Shown one piece after another: positions 3,001-63,419 of a stretch of 64,000 nt of DNA. The DNA is from Macrostomum lignano (lineage: Eukaryota). The position numbers were made by a program, and so were the translations under genes. The stretch is from NCBI GenBank assembly GCA_002269645.1, contig NIVC01002823.1, forward strand, positions 73,874 to 137,873. Direction: 5' to 3'. The notes beneath the pieces are model-generated. The model worked only from the letters and a program-made list of their open reading frames with translations, ran no database searches and was not told where the DNA came from. Each line of letters begins with the position of its first letter. Position 1 is the first letter of the stretch.

Positions 3001-6000
3001 TACACCCAACTCACAACAAGCTACACCCAACTCACAACAAGCTACACCCAACTCACAACAAGCTACACCCAACTCACAACAAGCTATACCCAACTCACAA
3101 CAAGCTATACCCAACTCACAACAAGCTACACCCAACTCACAACAAGCTACACCCAACTCACAACAAGCTACACCCAACTCACAACAAGCTACACCCAACT
3201 CACAACAAGCTACACCCAACTCACAACAAGCTACACCCAACTCACAACAAGCTACACCCAACTCACAACAAGCTATACCCAACTCACAACAAGCTACACC
3301 CAACTCACAACAAGCTACACCCAACTCACAACAAGCTACACCCAACTCACAACAAGCTACACTCAACTCACAACAAGCTACACCCAACTCACAACAAGCT
3401 ACACCAACTCACAACAAGCTACACCCAACTCACAACAAGCTACACCCAACTCACAACAAGCTACACCCAACTCACAACAAGCTACACCCAACTCACAACA
3501 AGCTACACCAACTCACAACAAGCTACACCCAACTCACAACAAGCTACACCAACTCACAACAAGCTACACCCAACTCACAACAAGCTACACCCAACTCACA
3601 ACAAGCTACACCCAACTCACAACAAGCTACACCCAACTCACAACAAGCTACACCCAACTCACAACAAGCTACACCCAACTCACAACAAGCTACACCAACT
3701 CACAACAAGCTACACCCAACTCACAACAAGCTACACCCAACTCACAACAAGCTACACCCAACTCACAACAAGCTACACCCAACTCACAACAAGCTACACC
3801 CAACTCACAACAAGCTACACCCAACTCACAACAAGCTACACCCAACTCACAACAAGCTACACCCAACTCACAACAAGCTACACCCAACTCACAACAAGCT
3901 ACACCCAACTCACAACAAGCTACACCCAACTCACAACAAGCTACACCCAACTCACAACAAGCTACACCCAACTCACAACAAGCTACATCCAACTCACAAC
4001 AAGCTACACCCAACTCACAACAAGCTACACCCAACTCACAACAAGCTACACCCAACTCACAACAAGCTACACCCAACTCACAACAAGCTACACCCAACTC
4101 ACAACAAGCTACACCCAACTCACAACAAGCTACACCCAACTCACAACAAGCTACACCCAACTCACAACAAGCTACACCCAACTCACAACAAGCTACACCC
4201 AACTCACAACAAGCTACACCCAACTCACAACAAGCTACACCCAACTCACAACAAGCTACACCCAACTCACAACAAGCTACACCCAACTCACAACAAGCTA
4301 CACCCAACTCACAACAAGCTACACCCAACTCACAACAAGCTACACCCAACTCACAACAAGCTACACCCAACTCACAACAAGCTACACCCAACTCACAACA
4401 AGCTACATCCCAACTCACAACAAGCTACACCCAACTCACAACAAGCTACACCCAACTCACAACAAGCTAACACCCAACTCACAACAAGCTACACCCAACT
4501 CACAACAAGCTACACCCAACTCACAACAAGCTACACCCAACTCACAACAAGCTACACCCAACTCACAACAAGCTACACCCAACTCACAACAAGCTACACC
4601 CAACTCACAACAAGCTACACCCAACTCACAACAAGCTACACCCAACTCACAACAAGCTACACCCAACTCACAACAAGCTACACCCAACTCACAACAAGCT
4701 ACACCCAACTCACAACAAGCTACACCCAACTCACAACAAGCTACACCCAACTCACAACAAGCTACACCCAACTCACAACAAGCTACACCCAACTCACAAC
4801 AAGCTATACCCAACTCACAACAAGCTACACCCAACTCACAACAAGCTACACCCAACTCACAACAAGCTACACCCAACTCACAACAAGCTACACCCAACTC
4901 ACAACAAGCTACACCCAACTCACAACAAGCTACACCCAACTCACAACAAGCTACACCCAACTCACAACAAGCTACACCCAACTCACAACAAGCTACACCC
5001 AACTCACAACAAGCTACACCCAACTCACAACAAGCTACACCCAACTCACAACAAGCTACACCCAACTCACAACAAGCTACACCCAACTCACAACAAGCTA
5101 CACCAACTCACAACAAGCTACACCCAACTCACAACAAGCTACACCCAACTCACAACAAGCTACACCCAACTCACAACAAGCTACACCCAACTCACAACAA
5201 GCTACACCCAACTCACAACAAGCTACACCCAACTCACAACAAGCTACACCCAACTCACAACAAGCTACACCCAACTCACAACAAGCTACACCCAACTCAC
5301 AACAAGCTACACCCAACTCACAACAAGCTACACCCAACTCACAACAAGCTACACCCAACTCACAACAAGCTACACCCAACTCACAACAAGCTACACCCAA
5401 CTCACAACAAGCTACACCCAACTCACAACAAGCTACACCCAACTCACAACAAGCTACACCCAACTCACAACAAGCTACACCCAACTCACAACAAGCTACA
5501 CCCAACTCACAACAAGCTACACCCAACTCACAACAAGCTACACCCAACTCACAACAAGCTACACCCAACTCACAACAAGCTACACCCAACTCACAACAAG
5601 CTACACCCAACTCACAACAAGCTACACCCAACTCACAACAAGCTACACCCAACTCACAACAAGCTACACCCAACTCACAACAAGCTACACCCAACTCACA
5701 ACAAGCTACACCCAACTCACAACAAGCTACACCAACTCACAACAAGCTACACCCAACTCACAACAAGCTACACCCAACTCACAACAAGCTACACCCAACT
5801 CACAACAAGCTACACCCAACTCACAACAAGCTACACCCAACTCACAACAAGCTACACCCAACTCACAACAAGCTACACCCAACTCACAACAAGCTACACC
5901 CAACTCACAACAAGCTACACCCAACTCACAAGCTACACCCAACTCACAACAAGCTACACCCAACTCACAACAAGCTACACCCAACTCACAACAAGCTACA

Positions 6001-6191
6001 CCCAACTCACAACAAGCTACACCCAACTCACAACAAGCTACACCCAACTCACAACAAGCTACACCCAACTCACAACAAGCTACACCCAACTCACAACAAG
6101 CTACACCCAACTAACAACAAGCTACACCCAACTCACAACAAGCTACACCCAACTCACAACAAGCTACACCCAACTAACAACAAGCTACACC
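1..6191. repeat. 21-bp minisatellite array (CACAACAAGCTACACCCAACT)n with 18-bp variants and higher-order duplications
   Basis: Unit read directly. Diagnostic variants at 81-185 recur exactly 816 bp later (e.g. CCAAGTC at 171 and 987). The array runs off the left edge of the window. Confidence 0.98.
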
Positions 6192-27050: not shown

Positions 27051-30000
27051 ATGGCTTATTATTGCGACTCACCCACATGTGCATCATGCTGTTTGAAGAC
27101 GGTTTCAGTTACAGTGACAATGATTTTGATGGTAAGTGTTTTATATCTTATCAAAAATATTTTTTGTTATCTAGTTAAGGGTCAAAGACAAGATTTTTTA
27201 GTTAAATCAATTAAAAATATGCTAAGGAGAAAAAATGGCACTTGCATTTAATTTAACATTTTAATGTATACATTTAAGTCAGTTGATAGATAATACTTAG
27301 ATGTTGTATATTGTATATTGATATCTATATGGCTATATCTATCTATATTCATATTGCCATTATATTTTACTTAAAAGTTATAAATAGATACTAAGAATAA
27401 ATTGAAGTAATAAGAATCCCAACCAACCTTCCATTTTTTGTAGAAAAGGCAAGCCAAGACATTAGTGTTACATTATTTATTTATTAAACTAGTAACAATA
27501 GCATATTTGAATAATTATACTAATTCATTGTGCTAATATATATTTTAATGGTTATAATTGCTTTATACAGTATGGATATATTGACATTTGTAAAAGAGCT
27601 ATTATCTCCTTCTTTTTCCCTCCTCATTTTGTAATAAGGTTAAGACTAGCTTTGGCAAAGTTAAATGTTTTTTATTTTTAAACTGCTTCCCAGTGTTTAT
27701 CTAATTTATATTGCAATGGTACTAGAAAAGAATAGATTAAAACCTAGATAAAAAGAGAAAGTTGCTTAGTTTTCATATTGAATTTGCTATATTTTTGGTA
27801 GACTAGACATTAGAGCAAAATCTGGATAATTCAATAGATATAAAAAAATAAGGCATTTTTATAATTTTCTGGTTTTAGTCTAGATATTGGTCTTGATTCT
27901 TGATAACCCAATTGACAAAATAGTTCAAAAACTAGCTCTTTATATAAGAATACCTCCAAAACTAGATGACTGAAATGAAAGTTGGGTGAAATCCAGACCT
28001 AAATAGGATAGAAAAAGCAAAAAAAAAATAAATTCTTTAAGGATATTGTCTGTAGTCTCTAACTTAAGTAATTGTAAACTATACAAATATAGTTCTCTAG
28101 AAAGTATTTGTTTTAGCAAAGGTTACATTTGATCAATATTTTCCAACAAAAAATCACCTATTATATCTTTTAACTAATTTAGAAAGATCTGAAAAGCTGA
28201 TTAAAAATTCTTTATGACGACTAAAATAAAATTATTCTTTGTTTAACTATTTAAATATAATAATGACAATTAAACAGTAAGAAAAGTTTTGGAACTTTAC
28301 TTGGACAATTTACTCTGTCATTGACAAAATCTACTTTTCTTCCACCCAGGCCATCTGTGTTGAGCGGCTGGTGCTGGATCTGCTTGGCTACCAGTGGACG
28401 GGCTGCATCTTCGACTTCGCCACTCTCCTCAGCTGCCTGTTCGCCGTGGCAGCCGTCTGCCAGCTGCGGCCGGGCTTCTGCTACGCTGTTGGCGCCTGGC
28501 TGCTGGCCTGGCTCGGCTGGAACGCCTTCCTGATCTGCTTCTACCTGGACGTCGACGGCCTGCAGGAGCGGGCGGCCAGCGTGCTGCACTGGGGCACTGG
28601 CAAGACCAGCTACTGGCGAAAGCTGCTGATTGGCTGCTCAGATTATCGGCTGCAGCTGCGGCTTCCGGTTGCGTTGCTAGGCAACCAGAATAACGGCACA
28701 GATAGTTCCGCTTTGTGGTGCCTGGTGGATTATCGAACAGCCGAGCTGCTGCACTGCGCAGCGGGGGGCGGCGCCGCCCTGCTCAGCATCCTGCTGCTCT
28801 GCTGCCTCGCCTGCCAGCTGCGCGAGGAGCTGCGCAAATTCGAACGGCCCGGCGGCCCCGCCTCCGCCTACCTGCCCGTGTCGGCCAACTCCAGCTTTGT
28901 GAAGATCCGGCCAGGCCGCCGGATGATGCGCCGGCCCGGCGACCACCCCGAGGCCAGCCTGTCCGACGCCGCCGCGGCCGCGGCTGCCGCCAGCTACGCC
29001 GACAATTCGCTGGGCCGCCGCTCGGCCGGCAGTCGTCGGAGCAGCGTCATGCGCGACCCCCTGCCCTGGGTTGAGCTTCAGGTGACCGGCGCGCCGCCGC
29101 AACAGCAGCAGCCGCCGCCACTGCGAGTCAACAGCGACGAGGGAGAGGCCAGCGAGTTCATCGACGACGCCCGGCCGCCGCCCTACACGGCCGGGTCCAA
29201 TTACCCGCGGCACCGGCCGCCGCAGCAGCAGGCGAGAAGGCGGCACCGCAGCGCCGGCAGCAGCGGCCGCAAGCGCAAAAGTCGCAGGCGGGCAGCGGCG
29301 GCTCCTCAAGCGGCGCCAACTGGCGCTGGCGCCGCCGTTAGTCTCACCGCTGCGTCGATTCCTCGGCCATCGTCGGCTATTGGTTTCCATGACAACCTGG
29401 CCTACGCTAGGGACGATGAACTAGATGATCCACCGCCGCCTCCTCCGCCGCCTGTTCAGCAGCTGCCGAAGCTGCCACAGTTCAATCCGACAGCCGGCGG
29501 CGGCGGAGTCGTGAACCGGACCTTCCGCCTGTCCTCCGAGTCCGTGCCTGGCGGCCCAGCCACGCCCTACGCGTCTGGCGCCGCTCCGATCTTCCGGCAG
29601 CAGCAGCAGCCGCCGTTTGCCCAGCTGGGCGATGACGAAGAATTTCCGCCGCCTCCGTCTCCGGCGCTGTTCCAGCCGCCGGTGTCTCAGCCGCCCCCGC
29701 CGCCGACTCAGCAGCAGCAACAGCAGCAGCCAACTGGGACTTCGGCTCAGCAGCGGCTGTTCAGCCCTCAGCAGCAGCAGCAGCACAGCATTCACAGGCC
29801 ATTGCGCAATCAGCAGCCCGCCGCCGCCGCTGTTTCGAGTTCCCGCAGTCGAGCTCCCATCTCACCCGATGCAGCGTTTTCAGGCCTCGACCAGCTTGAC
29901 GGCGGCGACGCCAGGCTGAGCACCCGCGGCCAGCAGCAGCCGCCGCCGCACCTCAGCCGCTCCTCTGCCGAGCAGAAGCCAATCTTTGTCAGCACGAGAA

Positions 30001-30224
30001 GCGAGGCGGCCGCGGCTGCGGCTGTTGCGGCTGCTGCCGCTTCGGCATCTTCCACTGCCGCAGTTGGCGGGCCAGCCTTTGGTCACGTGACCTCGCCTCG
30101 GGCCAGCCTGCCTCGCCATCCGTCATATCGAAGCGCCACGTCTCCAGGAGTCGGAGGCGGCGGCGGCGGAGGAGATGCAGGAGTTTTTATCGGAGGCGTT
30201 CACGGCAGCTCTGTGCTCATCTGA
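27051..30224 (+). CDS. NKAIN: Na+/K+-ATPase beta-subunit-interacting (NKAIN) family protein with long Pro/Gln/Ala-rich tail; exons 27051-27131 and 28350-30224
   Basis: The spliced N-terminus MAYYCDSPTCASCCLKTVSVTVTMILM|AICVERLVLDLLGYQW...WLGWNAFLICFYLD...SYW matches the NKAIN motifs (ERQIFDFLGYQW, WNVFVICFYL). Phase-0 intron with GTAAGT donor and CCCAG acceptor. Confidence 0.9.
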
Positions 30225-33871: not shown

Positions 33872-38629
<4,758 letters not shown>

Positions 38630-38681: not shown

Positions 38682-39143
38682 AATAGACACTCTCAGCTGC
38701 TGACAATAGCCACTCCCAGCTGCTGACAAGAGATACTCCCAGCTGCTGACAATAGGCACTCCCAGCTGCTGACAATAGGCACTCCCAGCTGCTGACAATA
38801 GCCACTCCCAGCTGCTGACAATAGCCACTCCCCAGCTGCTGACAAGAGATACTCCCAGCTGCTGACAATAGGCACTCCCAGCTGCTGACAATAGCCACTC
38901 CCAGCTGCTGACAAGAGATACTCCCAGCTGCTGACAATATGCACTCCCAGCTGCTGACAATAGGCACTCCCAGCTGCTGACAATAGCCACTCCCAGCTGC
39001 TGACAAGAGACACTCCCAGCTGCTGACAATAGCCACTCCCAGCTGCTGACAAGAGACATTCCCAGCTGCTGACAATAGGCACTCCCAGCTGCTGACAATA
39101 GACACTCCCAGATGCTGATAAGAGACACTCCCAGCTGCTGACA
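38682..39143. repeat. 23-bp minisatellite (CACTCCCAGCTGCTGACAATAGC), about 20 copies, just 3' of the Ig-mucin stop
   Basis: Direct reading. Confidence 0.95.
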
Positions 39144-40274
39144 GAAAGCACTTCTCCACAGACATTTTCCAATCAATCTTTCATGAGATTTTAGAAGCCA
39201 CTAAATGGCCGAATATCTGGTGGCCAATTTGTGCAATTTTCTGCTTTTGCAAAAGAACAGAATGAACTTCTGAACTGCTACATGTATCACAGGTTCCAGA
39301 AGACTACTATTGACTTTGATTTGGAATTCTTGTCCCGGTTGCTTTCGCTCGGGAATGTGAGACATGCGAACAATGTACTTTTAATTAGTTGCCTTGTTGC
39401 AAGCATATTATCTCCATTACGTCTTTCTCTGGTTCATTAACTAATCTTTTTTGCGTGTTAAATAATGTCTCTTATGCGCTTATGTTTGTGAAGACTGCTT
39501 TAAAAGTCCACAAAATATTTATTAAACTCCTTTCCCTGTTCATTGTGCTGTGCAACTGTACGCTATGATCTCCTGCACTGATGTTTTCTGTTTATTTCAT
39601 TTTTACCTCACTTCAAGTTCTGCGGGCAATAAATCGGCTGTCGGACAGTACAATCGATGTGATAATATTAGCACTAACTGGGTTGAAGATTAACTATACT
39701 GTAATCATGTAAGTTCGTCAATTCACTATTTTGTTAATATCGAGTACTTTATTGAATTCACTAATGGACATGGTAAGCTAGTTGCATGTGATAAAAATAA
39801 AAATGCAAACTACTCCATTTTCGAGAATAATTGCATGCGAGTATAAAACTTATTGCATTGTTTGCATTGCTCTTCGCGATAGCGTCATGGCCATTTATAG
39901 AGCACAGCAGCACAATAGTGCAATTGCGAAGAAAAACAATTCATCTTTACTTTTCATAAGCATTTGAAGCAGTTTTTGTACTATAAGTAGAAACACAAGC
40001 ATTTTAATGGAATTATTTAATCGAAACTGCAAAAGACAAAAAAATCTGAGGAACCAGCGTCTTGTAAAATGGCAAAAAAAATATGTATATTTGAGAAAAC
40101 TATTTTACATCATGGTACTGTTGGAAGCAGGCAACTATTTCGCAAATCACCTGTTCATTAAATGTCCCGATTACAAAAGTTCAGCGTCCGAGGCAGCTTA
40201 GCACCGAAAAAAAGCGAATTTGTTAATTGTTATTTGTTAATCCGTAAGAAAGGATTTTCAGGTAGTTAACAGAG

Positions 40275-42542
40275 CTACAGCCTTGTACTTTGACGGACTC
40301 GATCTAGCCGTTTGAAAGGCTTCTTCTTCTTCTTCTTCTTCGTCTTCAGCGCTCGCTTTACCGGCGCGGCGGCGCCGAGATTTGCGGGGGCCATCGCCCC
40401 ATGCTCCGAAGGAGCGAGAGACATTTTCCCGGGTTCCGGAGGAGCTCCTCGTGATCGTTCCCGACCAGGGCCATCCGTCGAGCGTCTCCCCGGTGGCAGT
40501 GAAGTAGCGCATGGGCGCTGTCGTCGAGTTCTCCGCAGTCCGGGCACTGCGGATTATCGATCATACCGAATCGGTGCTGGGTCTCGGCGCAGAGCATCGT
40601 CATGCCTGCGCGAAGCTGGCACACCGCCGTTTGCTCCCGCCGGTCTCTCGCTTTGAAGTCCGGCCAGGGTTGCGGCAGGGTTTCTTTCTCCAGGGTCCGG
40701 CGATCGCGGCGAATGGCTGCTTTTGCGGCGTTGAAGGAGATGGGCACTTCCTCTTGGGGCAAGCCTCTTGCCATGCCGGCCGCGCGGTCCGCCGCTTCAT
40801 TAAGGCTGATGCCGCAGTGGGCTGGCACCCAGATTAGTTCTATGTCGGCCGTTTCGTTGATGTCTAGCATGTGGCGCCAGCAGTCCGTACCGGTCTTAGT
40901 CGCCTGGGCTAGTGGTCCGGCCCCTAGTGCTGTCAGTGACGATAAAGAGTCGCTACATAGGCGAATCTTCTTTTCGCTCGGGCTGCGGTTGTTCTTAATA
41001 AAAACCAGTGCTTCGCGGATGGCTATCATTTCTGCGTCAAATGAGCTACAGATGATTCCGGCCGGGGCCTTGCGCACATGGCTCGCCAAGTTCGTGCAGG
41101 TTATAGCGGCGCTGCCGCCGGGTCCGGTGCCGTCCGCCACCGATCCGTCTGTCCACACGCTGATGTCAGCCTCAGGCAGTGACTGCAGAAACTCCGTTGC
41201 CGCCGCGCTCCGGGACTCCTGGGGGTCCGTGCGGCGGCATCGGGCCGAGATGTCCAGGCGGATGTTAATGTCCCGTGTGTCGCACTCCCACGGCGGGATG
41301 CCGGGGCTTACCGGGTCGCCTCTTTTGTGGGAATCCAATATGGCAACCGACGGCAGCTCCAGTGCCGCCCTCCTCCAGCAGTTCCGGAAGGGGCGGGTGG
41401 CGTCCCGCGGGTCGATGAGGTTCAGCGAGTTCGGCTGTGCTTCGTCGTCGGCGCCGCCGTCTCCGTGGGTGCGGCCGTGATCGCGTGCCAAAGCTTCGTA
41501 GGTACGGTTTTTCAGTCTAGGCCTGGTGTTCCGCAAGGCTACTTGTCCCGCCGAGACACTCGGGTCGAGTCTGAGGACTCTTTCCCTTAGGCGTGCCGCC
41601 CTCTCGGACGCGATGAATGAGAGCGGTGTGAGCCCGGCCAGTTGTAGGACTGAGCGGATGTTGGTCGGCATGATACATCCCGTAATCAGTCTCGCGCACG
41701 CGTTCTGCTGCTGTTCAATAGCTCGTCTGGTGGAGGGGGCGGCGCCGCATAGCCAGGTACCTGCGGCGTACTCGGCCACAGCGCGGACGGTACTGATGTA
41801 GGCTGTTCGGATCGTTTGTAGATCAGCTCCGGTGCTCCTGCCGGCCATCGCTGCGAGCGGTCGGCGTCTGGCGCACATCTTGGCGCGGACTGTCGCGGCG
41901 TGCTGCGCGAAATTGAGTTGACCGTCTAGGCGAACACCGAGGTAGTTCGGGGCTGGGTCAAAGGCTATTGGCTTGTCATCGATGAGCAGGTTGAGTCTCT
42001 TTTTGCCGTTTGATTCCTTTGCGTCCAGCGTGAAAGTGCCGTACACGCTCTTTTCCACGCTGAGCTCCACTTTCCATTCCTTGCACCACTGTGAGACGGC
42101 GTTCAGCGCGGGTTGCAGCTTCTCTTCACATGTGTCCAGAGACCTGTTAGAGGTCAGGAGGGCGCTGTCATCGGCATAAAGTTTGATGGAAACACCCGCG
42201 GCGGCGTTTAGCACCGCATCAGCCAGATCGTTGACGTAGACTAACCACAGTGTGGGGGCGAGCACCGACCCCTGTGGTAGTCCTTCCCGGAAGATGCGTT
42301 CTTTGCTGGTGCAGTCGCCGACGCGCACGCGGGCTCTTCGGTCTGACAGGAAGGCCTTGATCCACCGGATGACGTCGGCTGGCACTCCCAAGTCTCGCAG
42401 CTTCGAGTAGAGAGCCGCCCTCCAGACTCTGTCGTAAGCGCGGCTAAAATCAAGCAGGCAGAGCACTGACCTGATGTGCGGGGTGGCCTCGAGCTTGTCG
42501 AAAATCTCCTGGGAGATGTCGGCAATGAGCTCCTCGTTTGAA

Positions 42543-42587
<45 letters not shown>

Positions 42588-43795
42588 ATGATGCTCAAAG
42601 TGGCCGATCACCTCGGACCGGGGTCCGCGTCGGTACGATGTCAAACTGCCGCGAATGGTTGCCCTGGCAACGGCTGCCGGGTCGCGCTCGCCATTAAAGT
42701 AGTGATGCCCTGCCCGGCTGCTCAGGTGCTCATTGATGGTGCCTCGCCACCAGCCCGCCGTGTGCCGCCCTGAGCCGCCCACGCTGACAGCTCGAGTGAA
42801 CTGCTGCCGACTGTCCGCTGGGGGCACCGGCGGCTCCTCCCGCTGGCGTTGAATCCCTCGGGACAGCAGCTCGGACAGGTCGGCAGCGTCGGTGACAGCT
42901 TCGGCCAGCTTCAGCAGCGTTGGCCGGCGCTGGCTGACGGCGCTGGCAGCTGATGCCGCTGTTGTCCGATTGCCATGGCCCGAGCTGCTGCTACTGCTGG
43001 CTGCAAGCTCGTTCGGAACTTCGTCCAGCAACGAGTTATCATCCAAACCGTCTGCGACCGCTGCTGCTGGTGCTGCTGCCGTCGGCACCTTTGGTTGGGT
43101 AAGGATGCTGCATTGCTTACTTATAGCTGTGGTATCTTGTACTGGCTTTGTCTCTTCTATGCTCTAAGTTTCTGTCTGGATTTAGTCCATGAGGATGTCT
43201 GGATGAATTGGTTTGGCCCTAATGGTGTTGGATGCTTAGTTGGATCTTTTGATAGGACTTTCTGCTTTGGTGAACTTTACTAAGGCTTTTGATTCCTTGA
43301 ACTTTGTCCTGTAGTTCATTGGTTTGGTCCATGCTACACTCGCAACCCGTGCAGAAATCACTAGAGACGGGTTTCGCTGCAAAAAACTGCATTGTCAAGT
43401 TAGGAAGCTGGCAATTAGTAAACTTTCGAATGGCGAGAAGGCGAAAATGTTGAAAACTTCCAACACCAGCCTCCAGATAAATTTACACGATTTACGAGTG
43501 TAGAGTCCTTCAAATTGAGCTGTTCGTGCATCAGCCTCCTTACTGCATTTTGCTTTGATGTTGCCGCCAGTGCTGCCGAACTGCGGGCCGCTCGGGCATC
43601 GGTTGAGACTGGCAGATGAAGCCGTCGGTGCGGCTTCGAGTTCGCCGACTGCAGCTTCACTGTGGCGGCGCGTCGGTGCCCGCTGTCGAAGCGGTCGTCT
43701 GTAAAGGCGGCATTGTCGAATGCCGGATATCGGCGAGGATCGTAGATGGCAAAGAAGGCCACCGAGGACGATGGAGACGGGGCTGATGAAGCCAT
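40275..43795 (-). CDS. Uncharacterised protein (295 aa if intact, ending PFKRLDRVRQSTRL) whose last exon is interrupted by a LINE; exons 43795-43496 and 43088-42535 + 40308-40275
   Basis: Phase-0 splice CTC|GTAAAT...CAAAG|GTG joins the two ORFs. Removing the LINE and one TSD restores a continuous frame to TAG at 40275. The true 5' end may lie further upstream. Confidence 0.7.
40321..42534 (-). mobile_element. 5'-truncated non-LTR retrotransposon (I-group-like): partial RT, RNase H, C-terminal CCHC knuckle, (GAA)n tail, 12-bp TSD
   Basis: Motifs LDFSRAYD, GLPQGSVLAP, YADD; RNase H WTDGS...DAE...SDS...WVPAHCGISLNEAAD; CPDC...H...C. Stop at 40358-40360, then (GAA)7. TSD CGTTTGAAAGGC at 40309-40320 and 42535-42546. 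Confidence 0.96.
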
Positions 43796-45012
43796 GGGTT
43801 CTGCTTGAGTAGGCGGAAATGTCACAAGTTACGTTTCTTCGCTAGAAAGTTTTGCTCCGAGAACTGCTCAGGACTAAGAGCACAGCTACACTCAGACTAC
43901 AGGAGCGGAAGGCAGCCGGTGTTTCTGTGGATTTCTAGAGACTCGAACAGCGGCTATACTGCAGCAATGCGCAGAGGGCTGGGGTGGTCGCGCTGGTGGC
44001 AGAGGCGGGCTTTCAATGCAGCAAGTTGGGGGAATAAATTGGCTGTGCGATCGATATCCTTGAGGAGGTTGCGCGGCGCCGGGCCACCCCTCTCTCTCTC
44101 TCCTTTTCTTTCTCTCTGACTCTTCCCTTAGCTGGTGTGTGATGTGAGTCACTCGCCCAAGCCAAAGAAAGACCGAGAGGTTTTACTGCAGATTAGACTC
44201 GCCCGCCGAGGCACGAAACTAATGTCAAGACGCTAAATGTATCCCAACTTCTACGCTTTGCGTCGAAATTAGTCGATAAACTGCAAAATTTACGTTTAAT
44301 ACTGGGAAAGCCATTCGTGCATTTGGCCTGCTTTTCATGACTAAATTATGGCAGAAAGTTTTGCAAAAACTTCAATGCATTTGACTGTAACAGTTGGAGT
44401 ATACTCGTAGAATCGATCTTATTTCATACACTGATTCTGTTTTTGTTGTTGGTGGTGGTGTTTTTGTTGTTGTTGTTTTACTTGTTTTTTTATTACTGTT
44501 GTTGCTGTCTCGACGTTGTTTTACGCTCGTAGTTGTTTCAGTTGTTGTTGTTGTTGTTGTTGTTGCTGTTTTTGTCCAGCAACTTGCTTTAACAGACCGA
44601 AAAATATGAAGGAAATTAACAGTACCGATGCTCGTCTCTTAGATTGTAACAGCCAATTCAAAGTTCTTAAGCGTATTTTTTTAATTGTTACGTCACCAGC
44701 CAATAAGATGTCTTTATTTAAACAGAAACATGCAATTCTGTATAAAAGAATTGCTATAACGGGTACTTGTAAGTGTAAGAAAAGGTCCGGATTCGGGGAC
44801 AACCAGCCAACAGGTCACCATTACATCTGAATCAGAGTGGTCTAAAACTGTGTGCAAATCAAGACAGGTGAGAATAAATACTGATACTGAGGCCGCTGAA
44901 GTGCGTCCGAGCGGCCGCTTGGAGAGTTGTGGCCAGAGTTGGCTTAAAGCTGCCACTTGGTGACCACTGGTTTCGAAGTGGAAAATCTAACATGCTTATA
45001 CACTTATGTCAA

Positions 45013-45270
45013 GGGGTTGTAGCCTTTTAGTCAGAGCGTCGGACTCTGGACAGAAAGTTCGGGAGTTCGATTCTCGACCCACAATCGGAACAATTTGTAT
45101 CCTTGAGCAAGATTCTTAACTCTGCATTGCTTCAGTTCACCCGGCTGTAAAAATGGGTGCCAGCATTAGCTGGGCTAATTGAGGGTGGGCATGACAACCC
45201 CCAGTCCTTGGACTGAACAGCCGTACGCAGCCTTCAGATGCGCCGCGCAATAGCTGCGGCTGAGCTGTCA
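45013..45270 (+). mobile_element. tRNA-derived SINE with MIR/CORE-like central domain
   Basis: Head GGGGTTGTAGCC...GAGTTCGATTC, then TGTATCCTTGAGCAAGATTCTTAAC...CTGTAAAAATGGG, resembling the CORE consensus (TGTGACCTTGGGCAAGTTACTTAAC...CTGTAAAATGGG). The 3' end is approximate. Confidence 0.75.
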
Positions 45271-45365
45271 GTTGCACATCTAGTCCAGTTGGGCCATGGA
45301 CCCTTCCCGCAGGGGTGGATCACACTTCAATGATGCTGAGTGTATACGGGTATTTTTGAATATCT

Positions 45366-46109
45366 ATGGCAGAAACTATAACGGGAATCGCCTACGCCTA
45401 CGTAAGATCCTATTCCAACACGCGGCTTCCATCGGAAGACGATACTCAAGCCTCAAGCATGGCAGGAAATTTCAGCTCGATCGTAGAAACCGGCCTGTTG
45501 TCAATTGTTTGCATCATTCTGCGCACCCTGAGACGAACTTCTCATTTAATATTGGTGCACGTCAGCTGGCTGGTGTCACTAGCTGAGCTGCTGCTGGCTA
45601 CAGCCATTAGCGGTCAGTGCAGCTTCTACCTGGGCTCCATGCAGTGGCACCTGGTGCAGACAGCCGGTCTGTTCGGCCTGCTGGGCGCCTTGGAGTTCTC
45701 CGGCTGGCTGGACAGGCCCAGTCTGCTGTGCAGGCTGCCCAGCTTCCCAGCCTGGCTGACTCACAATCTGTCGAGAAGGCAAGAATTTCTGCTGGACCCA
45801 ATTGTGCAGTCCATTGTTGAACGCGGCTCTGTTGCTGGGGCCGGAAGTGTGTTGCTAAGCAGTAGTCTGAGCAGCGCTGATCAGCGACGCCTGGCCCAGA
45901 TGTTCCTTTTGTTTTATCTGACGCTGCTTGCGTGGGTCTGCGGCAAGGGTTGTGTTTTCATCTATTTGTATTACTCGCGATGCGATTATATTGTTAATGC
46001 GCTAGATGGCTTTGCTTGCGGTTACTTGCGCACTTCGTTGCCGGCAATTTTCACGGCATCAGTTATTGTAAGGCTTGTTATGTTTGTCTTCTGTATTTTG
46101 CCTGTTTGA
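45366..46109 (+). CDS. Candidate multipass membrane protein, 247 aa, no family recognised
   Basis: ATG-initiated non-repetitive ORF with 4-5 hydrophobic segments, followed by AT-rich sequence with AATAAA near 46206. Confidence 0.5.
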   Translation: MAETITGIAYAYVRSYSNTRLPSEDDTQASSMAGNFSSIVETGLLSIVCIILRTLRRTSHLILVHVSWLVSLAELLLATAISGQCSFYLGSMQWHLVQTAGLFGLLGALEFSGWLDRPSLLCRLPSFPAWLTHNLSRRQEFLLDPIVQSIVERGSVAGAGSVLLSSSLSSADQRRLAQMFLLFYLTLLAWVCGKGCVFIYLYYSRCDYIVNALDGFACGYLRTSLPAIFTASVIVRLVMFVFCILPV

Positions 46110-47232: not shown

Positions 47233-48053
47233 TGTAGTGTGGCTGCCAAGTCAATTTTTTGTCTCTTATTTTTGTCGTCGTCATTTATATTGTGGTAAAG
47301 AGGAGGCAAATTTAAACCTTGATACTACTTTCTTTTTTTATTTTGTTGTAGTTACATTGTTTTTGACGCCAGTTATATGGTTATTGGCTTCCTTTTTTAA
47401 TTCTAGTTTAATCATGTCCATGACAGAGAGTTTTACCAACTTTAATCACATTGGCTGATCCATCCAATTTAAAGAAAATATCCAGATTTTATGATTTTAT
47501 CAGGAAAAACCGTGCGAAATAGAAAATAGAATTTAGTTTTTTATTGTAACGAAAATTGCACAAGCATTGACTGGCTTGATTAGAAGATAGAACTAAAAAT
47601 TATAATTTTTGCTATGCAAATGTCTTGTCTTGCATTGAGGATTTAGAAGAATTCATAAAGTATTGCTGACTGCATTCAAAACAGAAAGCAAGTTGGATAT
47701 TGTAGTTGAATTTTTGACAGTCAATTAAAATAAAAGCCAATAGATATGCTATATCTATATAGTATTTTATGATTAATTCTAATGAGAGTTGATTATAAAC
47801 TTAGAGAAGCTTTGTCTTCTTTGGAAATATACACACGACACTTATTTCAGTGTACAGTTGAATCTAAATTTTAACTTTGTATTTTTTTTAAATAAAAACA
47901 TCTTTTATTCCACATATCCTATTAAAAAGGCTGTCCTATTAAAAATATGAAGGCTTCAAATGTTGAAAACTTAGTTTAAAGCATGTCTGGACGTTGCTAT
48001 GCGTGAAAGTCACTTTTAAAAATATATTGCATGCCAATTTTCAAGCCATCCAA

Positions 48054-49371
<1,318 letters not shown>

Positions 49372-50029
49372 ACTGGAATAGATTTCTCTTCCATGCGCGT
49401 TTTTACTACCGTTAATAATATTAGCGATTATAATCGAATAGCGATTCTGCTGTTTTATTCACTGTTTTCTGCACCTTAAATTTTATTACTTATCTGCAAT
49501 CAGGCTCTGGGAGCAATATAGGCTCGTAAAGCGACAAGCATATTTTTTGTTTTGTTTACGCATCCATAACTGTATGCGAGCTCTACTCGTAGATTTTAAA
49601 CATTTCCAATGTTGGACCCCAGATTTTTAACCTTATGTGTTGCTTAAAAAGTTTTTTTCAAATCGTTGCAATCCTGATATAGGTTTGGCCATTTCCCATG
49701 CTTGTTTATCGCAAATTCTTAAGCTTTCATAACTGATTGATATTGAATTACTAGCTAAATATATATATATATATGAAACGCTTCAATGAACTCAGTTTTA
49801 GACGTTTTCGTGCTTAAAGAATTATGGATTTCATGCTTGATTTTAAGGCGGCTTTGTGCTTTGACGAAGCAACACAAAAACTGTGTTATTGACAAACATA
49901 AACAAAACCGTACACTGCAGTCGTAGCAGTCGTAGCCTGTACTATGGTAATCCTAATGGCCTAAACACAACAAAACTCAACAAAATACGTTGTCAATCAG
50001 TCAGCAGACAACGTCATAAGGCGCGTTTT

Positions 50030-50620
50030 CAAGGCCTGGGCGCGAACGTAGGCCGCACCGCCGGCAGCGTCCAGGTCTCGGCGTTGTACAACAGACGGTC
50101 TCGATCACCGCCTGGAACAACGCCGCTCTCTGGCGGTCGGACAGGGGTCTCGGACTGCAGGACTGTCCTCACAGAGCGAAAGGCAGCCCAGGCAAGTCCA
50201 CGGCGACGTCGCAGGTCCTCGCAAACGTCAGGCACCAGACCGCTGAGGTAGACGAACTGCTGACAGCACGGAAGCTTCGTCACCTGCCCGTCAGCGCCAC
50301 GGCAGAAAATTGCAGCCTCAATGTCGTCCGGCACGCAGAGCACGACAGTCTTCTGCGTGTTGACCACCAGGCCGACGCTCGCTGGCGCTGGGCGGCGCTC
50401 ACCGGTTGGCGTTGACCCACGCGTCGCTGCAGCTGGAAGCCGTCGTCGTTAGAAGGGAGAGCAGTCCGCAGCACTCAGTCAAGCACCAGAACGAACAGGA
50501 ACGGCGCAAGCGTATCTCCCTGAAGCACCCTAGAGGATGTCTCAAAGAAATCCGGTAGGTTTTCCGGTGTTAGCACAGCAGCGTTCGTGCCATGATACAG
50601 CGCCATGACGGCGGAAATCA
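50030..50620 (-). mobile_element. Degenerate RTE-like LINE reverse transcriptase fragment
   Basis: Minus strand encodes ALYHGT...VLQGDTLAPFLFVLVLD*VLR, then VGLVVNTQKT...FVYL...LLYNAETWTL. It has a stop, frameshifts and a deletion over the YADD segment. Confidence 0.85.
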
Positions 50621-51243
50621 CACAGATGACAAATCACAGAAACAAAGTAATTTGTATCACCTTTGTTGGCTAGCTAGGTGAATCTGTAATCTATGCAATA
50701 GCTAAATAAAAACATGTATGAAGACTGTTAATTAATAACGAAAAGCACCTACAGACATGGTATTGTCTCTGAGTAGTCTGCAAGCAATGATCTCGCATTT
50801 ACAGAAGGCCATCGACTATTTTGAGCAGCTCTCCAATCTGTCTGGCCCCGCTTTTGTACGGCAATCAATTGTGGACTCCAGTTTATGGCGGGGAAATCAT
50901 GAGGGTGATGGAGAGGGAGAGGCGTGGGAGAGAGAAACTACGGGTAGGAAAGCCGCGGGGAAAAGTTCAGATCAGCTCATCTCTTCATCAACTTTAGCCT
51001 GACCCGTAAGATCCGCTGATCCCCCACCCGTGCAATCCCCTGATGGGCTGAATCTGCGCCTTCTCGGATCCCCCCGTCCATTCTCAAGGGTTACCGCGTC
51101 CCCGTGCGTCGCTCTGATTGGCGGTTGCCAATGACAACTAAAAATCTCCCCAGTCTCAAGCCTTCTAAAGACAATTGTTCTCAAGGGTTCAGGTTCAGGC
51201 CCTCATTTCCCCGCTGAGCCAATTCACCGCTTTGGGCTCGGCG

Positions 51244-51639
51244 ATGTCTAGCCAAAGAAGCAGCCAGGACGGCAAGAAATACGCAGCCAAAGATGTCAGC
51301 AAAGAGGCGTTCAAAACGGAAAAGAAGCAGAATTTGCGAGTAGAGAGGGACCAGTTCAACTACAAGTCGCAGAAACCGGACGCGAAAAAGCAGCAACCGC
51401 AGCAGCAGCAACCACCGCCATCACATCCGCAAAACCAGCAACCGCAAGAGCAACAGCCACCGCAGTCACATCCGCAGAAGCAGCAACCGCAAAAGCAGCA
51501 ACCACAGCAGCAGCAGCCACCGCCGCCGCCGCTACATCCGCAGAAGCAGCCTCAGCAACAGCAGCTGTACTCTGACAACTGGGACGCCGAAATCAATAAG
51601 GATTTGGAGAGACTGAAGCGCTTCGGACTAAAAGATTAG
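51244..51639 (+). CDS. Small Gln/Pro-rich protein, 131 aa, uncharacterised
   Basis: ATG-initiated ORF with non-repetitive charged ends. AATAAA lies about 65 bp after the stop. Confidence 0.55.
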   Translation: MSSQRSSQDGKKYAAKDVSKEAFKTEKKQNLRVERDQFNYKSQKPDAKKQQPQQQQPPPSHPQNQQPQEQQPPQSHPQKQQPQKQQPQQQQPPPPPLHPQKQPQQQQLYSDNWDAEINKDLERLKRFGLKD

Positions 51640-52477
51640 GATCTGCTAATGCTGATCTGAAGGATCCAGCAGCGATTAGGATCGAATCCAGGATTGATTT
51701 TTTCAATAAAAGTGCAGCAAGCCATGCTGCAGATGATAGAAATATCATCCAAGCCTTACTAGCGTACTGTATATTTGCCTAGCTATAATTTTTATTGGAA
51801 GATATTGTTTCACTTTTATACAAACTGAGATCCTATTCCATTATCACCTTTCACTCGCAAATAAAAGTCGCCATAAAAATGCAATCTCGCAAAAAAATTT
51901 TTCGTTTTGTAACAGACAATTGGCTTTTAAACAATAGGATTTCTGAATTGTAGACTGGCAAGCTTGAGGCCAGGTGCCTTTTTATTTCCATTGTTTCGTT
52001 TTGCATTCAGATGGAACGGCTGGCGATTCCGTGCCAGGCCAATTAATTTGGGGCATCGGTTCTCGCCCATGACGGCCAACCCCCAAGGTACAGAGAGTGT
52101 ACAGTACATGCCTGAATATGACCAAGCCAGGGCCGCTGTTCACCCTGTGTGATCGCGTTCCTGCAGTGGTCAGCTCAAAAGTTCAAAATTTTGTCCATGT
52201 TCAAAATCTTAAAAGTGGAAAATAATAAATCATTCTCTATGTTGAATACTAAAAATTGTTCGTAATAAAATGTTTATGAAATATATTACAACAATATCGA
52301 AATCGGTGAAATCAAATACCAATTATGCTTAATCATTACAAATTCGCAATTCTGATTAAAAAATGATGATTTTGCAGCTCTCTCGACAAAAAAATATCAG
52401 CTGATCTGCTGACGAATGCTCCTGCGGGCCACAATCGGCAATCTTGGTCTTCGGGACGGAGCTTAGACCGTTGAAGT

Positions 52478-52720
52478 AGCACCGGTTAACCTGGGACAGG
52501 ATCAGCACCGGTAAACCTGGGACAGGATCAGCACCAAAGTAAACTCTGGGTCAGGATCAGCACCGGTTAACCTAGTATAGGATCATCACTGGTTAACCCG
52601 GGACAGGATCAGCACTGGTTAACCCGGGATAGAATCAGCACCAGTTAACCTGGGGCAGGATCAGCACCAGTTAACCCGGGACCGGGAGAGAGGATCAGAA
52701 CCGGGTAACCCGAGGCAGGG
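52478..52720. repeat. Degenerate 26-bp tandem repeat (AGCACCGGTTAACCTGGGACAGGATC), about 9 copies
   Basis: Direct reading. Palindromic GGTTAACC core. Confidence 0.9.
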
Positions 52721-52737
52721 TCTGTACCAGTGCTTGA

Positions 52738-53703
52738 CTATCGCCACCACCAGGTGAAAGCGTCAAGTTCCTCATCCCCGCTCTCAGTCAGTTCAAATCC
52801 CGGCGGAACCAGCAGTTCCACGGTCCTACTTTCGCTTCGATACTTGAACGTCGACGAGCTGCGATCGTCGGCTAATCGGCGCAGCACAGAGAGCACGTCG
52901 ACGGTGACGAGAACCGCGGTGGCATCTTCGTGGCAGATGCCGCAGTCGCAGCAGTCGGTGTCGTGCTTCCACGGCTTGGCTATGGCGCTGAGGTTGGCGG
53001 CGGCGCACCGGTCGGCAACCAGCCGAGCCAGCGAGTCGGCCTCAAGCAGCGACTTGGACAGCGACTCCAAGGTCGATGTCGACGACGATTTGTAGGCGAA
53101 AATGGCGTAGCTTTCAAACTGCAAGTCGTTTTGTGGAAAATCAAAGATGAAAGGAGAGGGAAATTCGGAGATTGCAGAAAACTTGTCTGGAGCTTACGAG
53201 CTATCGTGCGATTAAGGCCAGTGTTGGTGTGTCAAGGACTACTGACTCAAGGACTATTCAAGCAGCAGGACGGAAACGGGGTTTCTTGGAAAATTTTAGG
53301 TGGCAGGTTTCAGAGAATATCGCGGCTGCAATTTTGAATCTGAAAAGCTGAGAACACGGTCGACTTGAAAAATACCTTGAACACAAACCTGTTGCAGGGC
53401 AGCTGTCGAGGTTTCTCCAGCCGCAGTCTCTGGAGGAGACGCCCGGCAGTTCAACAGGCGCAGCCGGACGAAATCGTGGCAAAGCGGCGGAGCTGCGGCC
53501 GAGTCGGCAGCCAGCGATCCGACATCCAGCCGGAAGCCGCGGTCCCGCAGCCCGGTGGAATCGAGCAGAACACTGTCCAGCAACCGAGTCTGCTCAGTGA
53601 TTGACACAAAATGAGACCCGAGCCGCTGCCACTGCGGCCAGGACAGGGAAACCAGACGGTGCTGCTGCGGCTGGGAGTAATCTTCTTCCCGCTTCTTCTC
53701 CAT
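52738..53703 (-). CDS. Uncharacterised two-exon protein (about 231 aa) with a CCDCGICH cluster; exons 53703-53389 and 53118-52738
   Basis: Phase-0 join CAG|GTTTGT...TTGCAG|TTT links two GC-rich ORFs in frame. Confidence 0.6.

Positions 53704-55692: not shown

Positions 55693-63419
<7,727 letters not shown>

What the first reader, a model, noticed from the sequence alone, without database searches (positions are those of the whole stretch)
40275..43088. Young LINE inserted into a coding exon replaces a C-terminal PDZ-type motif
Seen: a 2.2-kb stop-free RT-RNase H LINE with a perfect 12-bp TSD sits in sense orientation inside the last exon of a host gene, just after a poly-His/poly-Gln tract. 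The pre-insertion allele reads ...QQQPFKRLDRVRQSTRL*. The current allele reads ...QQQPFKR plus 27 LINE-derived out-of-frame residues (GAHCRH...SALPA*). Known: terminal T-x-L is a class I PDZ ligand. Inference: a recent insertional mutation or exonisation that removes scaffold binding, perhaps tolerated because a duplicate copy exists. Host transcription would also read through RT-RNase H sequence.
Basis: partly seen in the sequence, partly recalled or inferred. Interest (0 to 1): 0.75.

Follow-up and report, generated by a model that had tools for sequence, protein, structure and literature searches.

The report
Truncated LINE in one flatworm homeolog
A dead, 5'-truncated LINE retrotransposon recently landed in one of three near-identical duplicated copies of a locus in the polyploid flatworm Macrostomum lignano, cutting off the tail of an unannotated orphan reading frame whose intact twin survives on another contig. 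This is a well-documented but ordinary event in this genome.

Summary
The sequence observation is correct. A 2,214-bp RT-RNase H LINE fragment (window 40321-42534, minus strand) is flanked by a perfect 12-13-bp target-site duplication. It sits in sense orientation 4 codons after a His/Gln tract, and both predicted peptide tails read as stated. The window is Macrostomum lignano contig NIVC01002823.1. A ~98% identical homeologous contig (L003) carries exactly the predicted empty site, one TSD copy and an intact ORF ending ...QSTRL*. So the insertion, its youth and the surviving duplicate are shown. The LINE is 5'-truncated: it aligns to residues 517-1234 of a 1,247-aa relative, lacks the endonuclease, and was dead on arrival. 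The "host gene" is less secure. It has no Pfam domain, no homolog among 15 billion proteins, no gene call in GenBank at either copy, and atypical codon usage. On the other side, a 3-exon, in-frame model with consensus splice sites exists in both copies, pN/pS between copies is 0.32 (p=0.025), and all frameshifting indels avoid its exons. It is probably (~55%) a real orphan gene. The PDZ-ligand idea rests on a 3-residue motif and is untested. TE presence/absence between homeologs is pervasive in this neopolyploid, so interest is low.

The parts
40321..42534 (-). 5'-truncated LINE copy (2,214 bp). It corresponds to residues 517-1234 of a 1,247-aa APE-RT-RNase H relative. The endonuclease and the first ~60 residues of RT are missing.
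   Evidence: Pfam RT and RNase H; BLASTP to P0005, 41% identity, query 3-713 against subject 517-1234; P0005 domain order APE-RT-RNH; absent from homeolog L003
40309..40320 (.). Target-site duplication, copy at the LINE 3' end (minus-strand reading GCCTTTCAAACG)
   Evidence: Exact 12-mer found only twice in the window; a single copy at the empty site in L003
42535..42546 (.). Target-site duplication, copy at the LINE 5' (truncated) end
40321..40357 (-). LINE 3'UTR (37 nt) ending in a (GAA)7 tail, directly abutting the TSD
   Evidence: Sequence read; the LINE stop codon TAA is at 40358-40360
42017..42511 (-). Reverse-transcriptase domain. The Pfam profile is entered at position 55 of 205, so it is N-terminally truncated. 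YADD is present.
40775..41167 (-). RNase H domain of the LINE, followed by a C-terminal CX2C...HX4C motif (CPDCGELDDSAHALLHC)
42547..43088 (-). Host ORF upstream of the insertion (putative exon 3, behind the acceptor CCAAAG|GTG). It ends in a (CAT)5(CAG)11 His/Gln tract at 42547-42593.
   Evidence: ORF; intact with a 48-nt in-frame longer tract in L003; no Pfam domain or homologs
42450..42533 (-). 27 LINE-derived out-of-frame codons (GAHCRH...SALPA) plus a stop, forming the new C-terminus of the host ORF
40275..40308 (-). Displaced original ORF end: the last base of the R codon, then LDRVRQSTRL, then TAG. It now lies 2.2 kb downstream of the rest of the ORF.
   Evidence: identical and contiguous with the ORF in L003
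43281..43376 (-). Putative exon 2 (32 codons; acceptor TTTTTTGCAG|, donor |GTAAAG). This is a model only.
   Evidence: both substitutions against L003 are synonymous third-position changes
43544..43795 (-). Putative exon 1 (ATG at 43795; donor GCA|GTAAGG). This is a model only.
   Evidence: the single substitution against L003 is synonymous; the 2-bp and 1-bp indels between copies fall in the intron behind it

Best explanation
**Shown.** A 5'-truncated cDNA copy of an RNase H-bearing, APE-type LINE was inserted into one homeologous copy of this locus in the neopolyploid flatworm Macrostomum lignano. The insertion followed the split of the three subgenomes.

**Inferred mechanism.** Insertion was by target-primed reverse transcription. 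The plus strand was nicked after ...GAAAGGC. That 3'-OH primed cDNA synthesis on the (GAA)n tail of the LINE RNA. Synthesis or second-strand joining stopped inside the RT region. A staggered second nick 12-13 bp away produced the TSD. The copy lacks its endonuclease and the start of RT, so it was dead on arrival.

**Where it landed.** It sits four codons past a His/Gln tract, 11 codons before the stop of an unannotated, lineage-restricted ORF. I judge this ORF to be probably, but not certainly, the terminal exon of a real 3-exon orphan gene of about 311-327 aa.

**Consequence for that ORF.** The last 10 residues (LDRVRQSTRL) are replaced by 27 frame-shifted LINE-derived residues. Any transcript would gain about 2.2 kb of extra 3'UTR, because the LINE has no sense-strand poly(A) signal.

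**Likely fate.** At least one homeolog (contig NIVC01001441.1) keeps the intact ORF, so the lesion is probably neutral. It is best seen as an early step of homeolog loss. The disrupted copy alone shows an excess of A/T alleles in the broken exon, which is consistent with decay.
For: - **Identity of the window.** It equals NIVC01002823.1 (GCA_002269645.1) at 100% over 21.3 kb. The B9D1 exons are 100% identical to M. lignano proteins.
- **Insertion anatomy.**
- **Truncation point.**
- **Empty site.** L003 carries the empty site with a single TSD copy and no LINE remnant. The flanks are 97.4-98.4% identical.
- **Three homeolog classes.** They are about 98% identical to one another. This matches the S/L1/L2 subgenomes and 1.9-2.4% SNP divergence reported in PMC10733133.
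- **Youth of the insertion.** The LINE keeps 738 sense codons with no stop or frameshift. Non-coding DNA around it differs between homeologs by about 3 indels per kb.
- **Coding status of the host ORF.** The 3-exon model is in frame in both copies. Sd is 8 and Nd is 7, giving pN/pS 0.32 with binomial p 0.025, against 1.4-1.65 in the off-frames. All 7 indels whose length is not a multiple of 3 lie outside the model's exons. GC-rich blocks coincide with the exons, and GC drops at the stop.
- **Decay signal.** In exon 3 the window has A/T where L003 has G/C at 13 sites, and the reverse at 2. Elsewhere the counts are 48 and 47.
Against: - **No gene call.** GenBank calls no gene at the host ORF in either the filled (L002) or the empty (L003) copy.
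- **No protein match.** Nothing in a 5.8-billion-sequence word-indexed search or an exhaustive HMMER search of 1.84 billion representatives (the only hit was a repetitive junk protein) matches the ORF. Both M. lignano proteomes are in those libraries.
- **No Pfam family**.
- **Codon usage is uninformative.** The score is about 0 and equals that of the best antisense frame. GC3 is 0.69 against 0.82 in known genes. The low-complexity tail of the real NKAIN gene scores the same.
- **Spurious long ORFs are common here.** ORFs of 200-350 aa occur in GC-rich DNA of this window, for example a 292-aa ORF antisense to the LINE.
- **High divergence.** Exon 3 differs by 2.4-2.9% between copies. That is at or above the genome-wide neutral figure (2.2%) and above the CDS figure (1.1%) of PMC10733133.
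- **Small sample.** The pN/pS test rests on only 15 substitutions, and I built the exon model myself.
- **No outgroup.** The direction of the A/T asymmetry, and insertion versus precise loss, are both inferred.
Confidence: 0.55

Rival explanations
1. The LINE insertion is real, but the 'host ORF' is not a gene. It is a chance open frame in GC-rich, trinucleotide-repeat-rich intergenic DNA between the 706-aa gene and B9D1, so the insertion has no coding consequence.
For: - GenBank calls no gene at either copy.
- There are no homologs or annotated M. lignano proteins and no Pfam family.
- The codon-usage score is about 0 and equal to the antisense frame, and GC3 is 0.69 against 0.82.
- Long spurious ORFs are frequent in this window.
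- From base composition I estimate that a 65%-GC stretch of 180 codons stays open in a given frame about 1% of the time, or about 6% over six frames.
- Exon-3 divergence is at the neutral level.
Against: - The in-frame 3-exon model with GT-AG consensus sites is preserved in both copies.
- All three substitutions in exons 1 and 2 are synonymous, and overall pN/pS is 0.32 with p=0.025, while the off-frames exceed 1.
- All 7 frameshifting indels fall outside the exons.
- The GC-rich/AT-rich alternation matches the exon/intron pattern of real genes here.
- The GenBank annotation excluded transcripts overlapping repeat annotations (PMC5730564). This ORF carries a long (CAG)n tract.
Confidence: 0.4
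2. The LINE was present in the common ancestor of the homeologs. It was precisely lost from the L003 copy by recombination between the 12-bp repeats or by gene conversion from an empty copy.
For: No outgroup copy covers the site: L004 starts at window 43539 and L005 at 44051. Blocks of zero divergence between homeologs, such as 49372-52737, suggest gene conversion operates here.
Against: - The LINE frame is fully intact over 2.2 kb, whereas surrounding non-coding DNA has accumulated about 3 indels per kb between homeologs.
- The TSD is perfect.
- Precise excision of LINEs is very rare (established knowledge).
- Exon 3, next to the site, is among the most diverged segments. That is not what a recent conversion tract would look like.
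Confidence: 0.04
3. The insertion is a selected exonisation. The chimeric protein with a new 27-residue tail is expressed, and loss of a class I PDZ ligand rewires scaffold binding.
For: The pre-insertion tail -S-T-R-L fits [S/T]-x-[hydrophobic]-COOH. The premature stop lies in the terminal exon, so by general knowledge of nonsense-mediated decay the transcript would probably escape it.
Against: - There is no evidence that the protein exists or binds PDZ domains.
- The motif is low-information.
- There are no orthologs in which to test conservation.
- The LINE-bearing copy shows excess change (13:2 A/T asymmetry, mostly non-synonymous). That looks like decay, not refinement.
- The intact homeolog still supplies the original tail.
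Confidence: 0.03

Closest known systems
RNase H-bearing APE-type non-LTR retrotransposons (I / LOA / Tad1 / Ingi / Nimb-type LINEs)
   Same: The domain order is APE-RT-RNase H-Cys/His motif, seen in full-length relatives and in the retained RT-RNH-CCHC part here. The element has a simple-repeat 3' tail, a variable 5' truncation and a 12-13-bp TSD. All known LOA elements carry RNase H downstream of RT (PMC2790886). The I factor ends in a (TAA)n repeat (my knowledge).
   Different: The closest proteins are only 38-43% identical: Convolutriloba, Amphibalanus and marine-metagenome eukaryotic contigs. No clade phylogeny was made, so the clade is unassigned. The tail is (GAA)n and the 3'UTR is only 37 nt. 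ORF1 and the 5' end are unknown because this copy is truncated.
Exonic LINE insertions as insertional mutations (e.g. human L1 in F8 or APC exons; the Drosophila I factor in hybrid dysgenesis) — from my knowledge, not tested here
   Same: A 5'-truncated, TSD-flanked LINE copy sits inside an ORF, changing its C-terminus and extending the transcript.
   Different: Here the target is an unannotated orphan ORF of unproven expression, and intact homeologous copies exist. No phenotype is expected or known.
Homeolog divergence and fractionation by TE and indel differences in M. lignano (PMC10733133)
   Same: Three about 98%-identical copies of the locus differ mainly by insertions and deletions. That paper reports 2.2% SNP divergence, rising to about 36% difference when indel lengths are counted. 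This LINE is one such difference.
   Different: This case is resolved to the base pair, with a TSD, an empty site and a disrupted ORF. It also carries a hint of asymmetric decay in the disrupted copy. I did not find such a case described in the passages of that paper that I read (a term search).

Membership tests
APE-type LINE (non-LTR retrotransposon), RNase H-bearing group | Reverse transcriptase domain with a YxDD catalytic motif | tested here: met
   PF00078 at E 1.5e-23; YADD at residue 119 of the LINE peptide
APE-type LINE (non-LTR retrotransposon), RNase H-bearing group | RNase H domain C-terminal to RT | tested here: met
   PF00075 at E 5.4e-11, residues 478-608 of the ORF
APE-type LINE (non-LTR retrotransposon), RNase H-bearing group | Apurinic/apyrimidinic-like endonuclease N-terminal to RT | tested here: not met
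   Absent from this copy because of 5' truncation: the alignment starts at residue 517 of P0005. It is present in full-length relatives as PF03372 and PF14529. The family assignment therefore rests on homology of the retained part.
APE-type LINE (non-LTR retrotransposon), RNase H-bearing group | Target-site duplication flanking the element, with an empty site elsewhere | tested here: met
   12-13-bp perfect TSD; the empty site with one copy in L003
APE-type LINE (non-LTR retrotransposon), RNase H-bearing group | No LTRs; a 3' end with a poly(A) or simple-repeat tail | tested here: met
   (GAA)7 directly abuts the TSD. No terminal repeats were found in 39000-45000.
APE-type LINE (non-LTR retrotransposon), RNase H-bearing group | Multiple dispersed copies, including full-length ones, in the genome | not testable with these tools
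   No other copy in the window or in about 94 kb of fetched loci. No tool here searches the M. lignano assembly.
Specific LINE clade (I, LOA, Tad1, Ingi or Nimb) | Placement within the clade in an RT phylogeny with reference elements | not tested
   No reference (Repbase) sequences were available. Only the domain architecture is consistent.
Protein-coding terminal exon of a host gene | Open frame joined to upstream exons by consensus splice sites | tested here: met
   The 3-exon in-frame model (GCA|GTAAGG...TTTTTTGCAG|, TTA|GTAAAG...CCAAAG|) holds in the window and in L003. The model is mine and is not transcript-based.
Protein-coding terminal exon of a host gene | Annotated or transcribed as a gene | tested here: not met
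   No gene call between the 706-aa gene and B9D1 in L002 or L003. [quoted passage not shown] RNA-seq was not available here.
Protein-coding terminal exon of a host gene | Homologs or a known domain | tested here: not met
Protein-coding terminal exon of a host gene | Purifying selection between duplicated copies | tested here: inconclusive
   pN/pS is 0.32 and p is 0.025, from 15 substitutions. Exon 3 alone gives 0.51. The indels avoid the exons, with my estimate of p about 0.06.
Protein-coding terminal exon of a host gene | Species-typical codon usage | tested here: inconclusive
   GC3 is 0.69 against 0.82. The LLR is about 0, as for the low-complexity tail of the real NKAIN gene.
Class I PDZ-binding C-terminal motif | [S/T]-x-[V/L/I] at the free C-terminus | tested here: met
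   The tail is ...S-T-R-L* in the reconstructed allele and in L003. This is a low-information pattern.
Class I PDZ-binding C-terminal motif | Conserved in orthologs; binds a PDZ domain | not testable with these tools
   No orthologs were found. Binding needs an experiment.

The most novel reading that the evidence does not exclude
The locus catches the first step of homeolog loss after the recent M. lignano genome duplication. A LINE truncates one of three copies of a young orphan gene. That copy alone then accumulates GC-to-AT changes in the broken exon (13:2 asymmetry, clustered, including two tandem double substitutions). This would point either to relaxed selection or to local loss of GC-biased gene conversion next to the 2.2-kb heterology.
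Probability: 0.3. Interest if true: 0.35.

Novelty: new member of a known kind. Interest (0 to 1): 0.2.

Why it matters
On its own it matters little. Presence/absence of transposable elements is the main difference between the three M. lignano subgenomes, and this is one cleanly resolved example.

It has three modest uses:
- It gives a base-pair-exact filled/empty pair that can serve as a subgenome-specific PCR marker in DV1, NL10 and NL12 lines.
- It shows that an RNase H-bearing LINE family was active after the genome duplication. The family's nearest annotated relatives are only about 40% identical and come from acoels, barnacles and marine metagenomes. LINEs of this species were not characterised in the papers I consulted.
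- It flags a candidate unannotated orphan gene present in both copies, and a possible signature of early pseudogenisation.

None of this opens a long-standing question.

Tried and rejected
1. **Homolog searches for the host ORF.** A concatenated exon query and an exhaustive HMMER search of the 184-aa exon gave nothing usable. The only hit, P0121, is a repetitive artefact.
2. **Pfam on the host ORFs and neighbours.** Nothing was found for the host.
3. **Rfam and tRNA scans of the window.** Nothing was found.
4. **Self-BLAST of the LINE and both flanks against the window, and tblastn of a full-length relative against all loci.** No second LINE copy and no duplicate of the host ORF inside the window.
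5. **The 76%-identical B9D1 paralog locus (L001).** It is intronless and lies in a different neighbourhood, so it is not syntenic and was useless for the empty-site test.
6. **Look-up of the UniRef B9D1 protein P0122.** It is not on record. The route that worked was its cluster mate P0240.
7. **My first exon-1 donor (CTC|GTAAAT at 43496).** I abandoned it because L003 lacks that GT and has a 2-bp deletion there. The upstream GCA|GTAAGG donor is conserved.
8. **An alternative frame for exon 2 (AAKPVSSDFCTGCECS...).** I rejected it because it cannot join exons 1 and 3 in phase.
9. **Codon-usage scoring.** It did not discriminate.
10. **Reconstructing the 706-aa upstream gene to fish for a third homeolog covering the site.** I abandoned this because its acceptor appears to lie inside an (AGT)215 repeat and cannot be guessed exactly.
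11. **The idea that the 'host ORF' is the LINE's own 5' part.** Rejected, because L003 keeps that sequence contiguous with the 3' flank while lacking only 40321-42534.
12. **Literature search for described M. lignano LINE families.** None was found in the papers read.
Full report
**What is in the sequence**

The stretch 40275-43088 was read on both strands.
- The 12-mer CGTTTGAAAGGC occurs exactly twice in the 64-kb window, at 40309-40320 and 42535-42546. A 13th base is also shared.
- The 2,214 bp between the two copies encode, on the minus strand, a reverse transcriptase (PF00078, E 1.5e-23) and an RNase H (PF00075, E 5.4e-11).
- These domains lie in a frame with no stop from 42598 to 40358. 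YADD and the RNase H acidic-residue contexts are intact.
- The element ends with TAA, a 37-nt 3'UTR and a (GAA)7 tail that abuts the TSD.
- A minus-strand ORF (43088..42450) runs into the element from outside. It reads ...HFEHHHHHQQQQQQQQQQQPFKR, then 27 out-of-frame LINE codons, then a stop.
- Removing the LINE and one TSD copy restores ...QQQPFKRLDRVRQSTRL*.

**Where the window comes from**

- An exon at 48054-48458 is 100% identical to B9 domain-containing protein 1 of Macrostomum lignano.
- Its cluster mate P0240 carries four GenBank accessions. That protein led to four loci in assembly GCA_002269645.1 (Mlig_3_7).
- L002 is identical to window 38036-59371. The window is therefore the last 64 kb of contig NIVC01002823.1, and record coordinate equals window coordinate plus 73,873.
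- The other three loci are homeologous copies. L004 is 99.8% identical to the window. L003 and L005 are each about 98% identical to the window and to each other.
- This matches the three subgenomes (S, L1, L2) and the 1.9-2.4% SNP divergence described for this neopolyploid (PMC10733133).

**The empty site**

- L003 (NIVC01001441.1) aligns to the window up to 40321 and again from 42545, and it lacks the LINE.
- The sequence shows one copy of the TSD, no LINE remnant, and a continuous ORF ending ...QPFKRLDRVRQSTRL*.
- This shows three things: the boundaries of the insertion, that the 'host' sequence is not part of the LINE, and that an intact duplicate exists.
- L004 and L005 begin at window positions 43539 and 44051. 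They do not cover the site, so no outgroup is available.
- Insertion after the homeolog split is the parsimonious reading. Precise loss from L003 is a minor rival.

**The LINE**

- The best protein relatives are only 38-43% identical. They come from the acoel Convolutriloba, the barnacle Amphibalanus and eukaryotic contigs in marine metagenomes.
- Full-length relatives are about 1,250 aa, with an APE endonuclease, RT and RNase H.
- The copy here aligns to residues 517-1234 of P0005. About 515 residues are missing, covering all of the endonuclease and the first ~60 residues of RT. It is a dead-on-arrival 5' truncation, the usual product of target-primed reverse transcription.
- RNase H downstream of RT, plus a terminal CX2C...HX4C motif, places it among the I/LOA/Tad1/Ingi/Nimb-type LINEs. 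LOA elements characteristically carry RNase H (PMC2790886). No phylogeny was possible, so the clade is open.
- No second copy lies in the window or in the fetched loci. The genome itself could not be searched.
- Youth: the frame is intact over 2.2 kb, while non-coding DNA around it differs between homeologs by about 30 indels in about 10 kb. Even halved for one lineage, and allowing that many of those indels sit in simple repeats, several frameshifts would be expected in a copy as old as the split.

**Is the host ORF a gene? Evidence against**

- The GenBank annotation calls no gene between the 706-aa gene (which ends at window 38629) and B9D1, in either the filled or the empty copy.
- Neither a word-indexed search of 5.8 billion proteins nor an exhaustive HMMER pass over 1.84 billion representatives finds anything. 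The one hit was a repetitive artefact. Both M. lignano proteomes are in those libraries.
- There is no Pfam family.
- GC3 is 0.69, against 0.82 in seven trusted M. lignano coding segments. The codon log-likelihood is about 0, no better than the best antisense frame.
- Spurious ORFs of 200-350 aa are common in GC-rich parts of this window.

**Is the host ORF a gene? Mitigating points**

[quoted passage not shown] This ORF contains a long CAG/CAT tract.
- The low-complexity tail of the genuine NKAIN gene scores just as poorly.

**Is the host ORF a gene? Evidence for**

- A three-exon model exists: 43795-43544, 43376-43281, and 43088 to the stop. Its splice sites are GTAAGG/TTTTTTGCAG and GTAAAG/CCAAAG. 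It is in frame in both copies, giving 311 aa pre-insertion in the window, 327 aa in L003 and 328 aa for the current allele.
- Between the copies, the three substitutions in exons 1-2 are all synonymous. Over the whole model Sd is 8 and Nd is 7, so pN/pS is 0.32 (binomial p 0.025). The two off-frames give 1.4-1.65.
- All seven indels whose length is not a multiple of three fall outside the exons. The only exonic indel is 48 nt, in the Gln tract.
- GC content alternates in the exon/intron manner seen for real genes here.

I put the probability that this is, or until recently was, a real orphan gene at about 55%.

**Consequences and fate**

- If the ORF is expressed, the last 10 residues are swapped for 27 LINE-derived ones.
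- There is no AATAAA or ATTAAA on the sense strand within the LINE. The first such signals are at 40021 and 40008, about 255-270 nt past the old stop. A transcript would therefore run through the LINE to the original 3' end.
- By general knowledge of nonsense-mediated decay, a stop in the terminal exon should not trigger it.
- The intact homeolog makes a phenotype unlikely.
- In exon 3, the 16 substitutions between copies are lopsided. The LINE-bearing copy has A/T where L003 has G/C at 13 sites, and the reverse at 2. The rest of the 18-kb alignment gives 48 and 47.
- Eight of those substitutions cluster in 64 nt and include two adjacent double changes. Without an outgroup this is only suggestive. 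It fits decay of the disrupted copy under GC-to-AT mutation pressure, or a local loss of gene conversion.

**The PDZ idea**

The tail S-T-R-L fits the class I pattern. The pattern is short; by my estimate about 3% of random tails would fit. There are no orthologs to test conservation and no interaction data. It remains a guess.

**Verdict**

The event is a new member of a known kind. In M. lignano, homeologs differ by about 36% once indel lengths are counted (PMC10733133), so a homeolog-specific TE insertion is expected rather than surprising. Interest is low (0.2).

Noticed in passing
window 42547-43088 compared with L003 4502-5090: The substitutions between the LINE-bearing copy and the intact homeolog are strongly asymmetric in the disrupted exon. 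The window has A/T where L003 has G/C at 13 sites, and the reverse at 2. Elsewhere the counts are 48 and 47. Eight of the changes cluster in 64 nt (43038-42975), with two tandem double changes.
   Followed up: partly
window 49372-52737 and 45366-46109, compared with L003: Blocks with zero substitutions between homeologs (3.3 kb and 0.74 kb) lie next to blocks at about 3% divergence (43796-45365). This suggests gene conversion between subgenomes or cross-polishing in the assembly.
   Followed up: no
window 45366-46109 (+): An unannotated 247-aa ATG-initiated ORF with several hydrophobic, transmembrane-looking stretches. It has no Pfam hit and is identical in L003. It may be another unannotated gene, diverging from the host ORF across a shared 1.5-kb upstream region.
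   Followed up: no
window 1-6191: A 6.2-kb satellite of a 21-bp unit (AGCTACACCCAACTCACAACA, about 297 copies, 96% matches) with extreme strand skew (GC skew -0.8).
   Followed up: no
window 36817-37463 and 38682-39143: An (AGT)215 microsatellite lies inside or next to the annotated 706-aa plus-strand gene. A 23-bp minisatellite (20 copies) lies immediately after that gene's stop at 38629. The minisatellite is the most diverged segment between homeologs (6% plus a 45-nt indel).
   Followed up: no
window 48036-49371 (+): This is the B9D1 gene. It has two exons (48036/48054-48458 and 49180-49371), and its single intron is filled by a (CTGC/CTGT)n microsatellite. A second, intronless B9D1 paralog, 76% identical, lies in an unrelated neighbourhood (L001), which suggests a retrocopy.
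   Followed up: partly
window 28371-30224 (+), 60386-60985 (+), 52738-53703 (-): Other genes in the window: an NKAIN-domain ORF with a ~430-residue low-complexity tail, a PP1-type Ser/Thr phosphatase exon, and an annotated 231-aa minus-strand gene with no Pfam hit on record.
   Followed up: no
L004 position 1 (= window 43539) and L005 position 1 (= window 44051): Two of the four homeologous contigs end within 0.5-1.5 kb upstream of the host ORF exon 3. The assembly may break here because the copies differ structurally around the LINE site.
   Followed up: no
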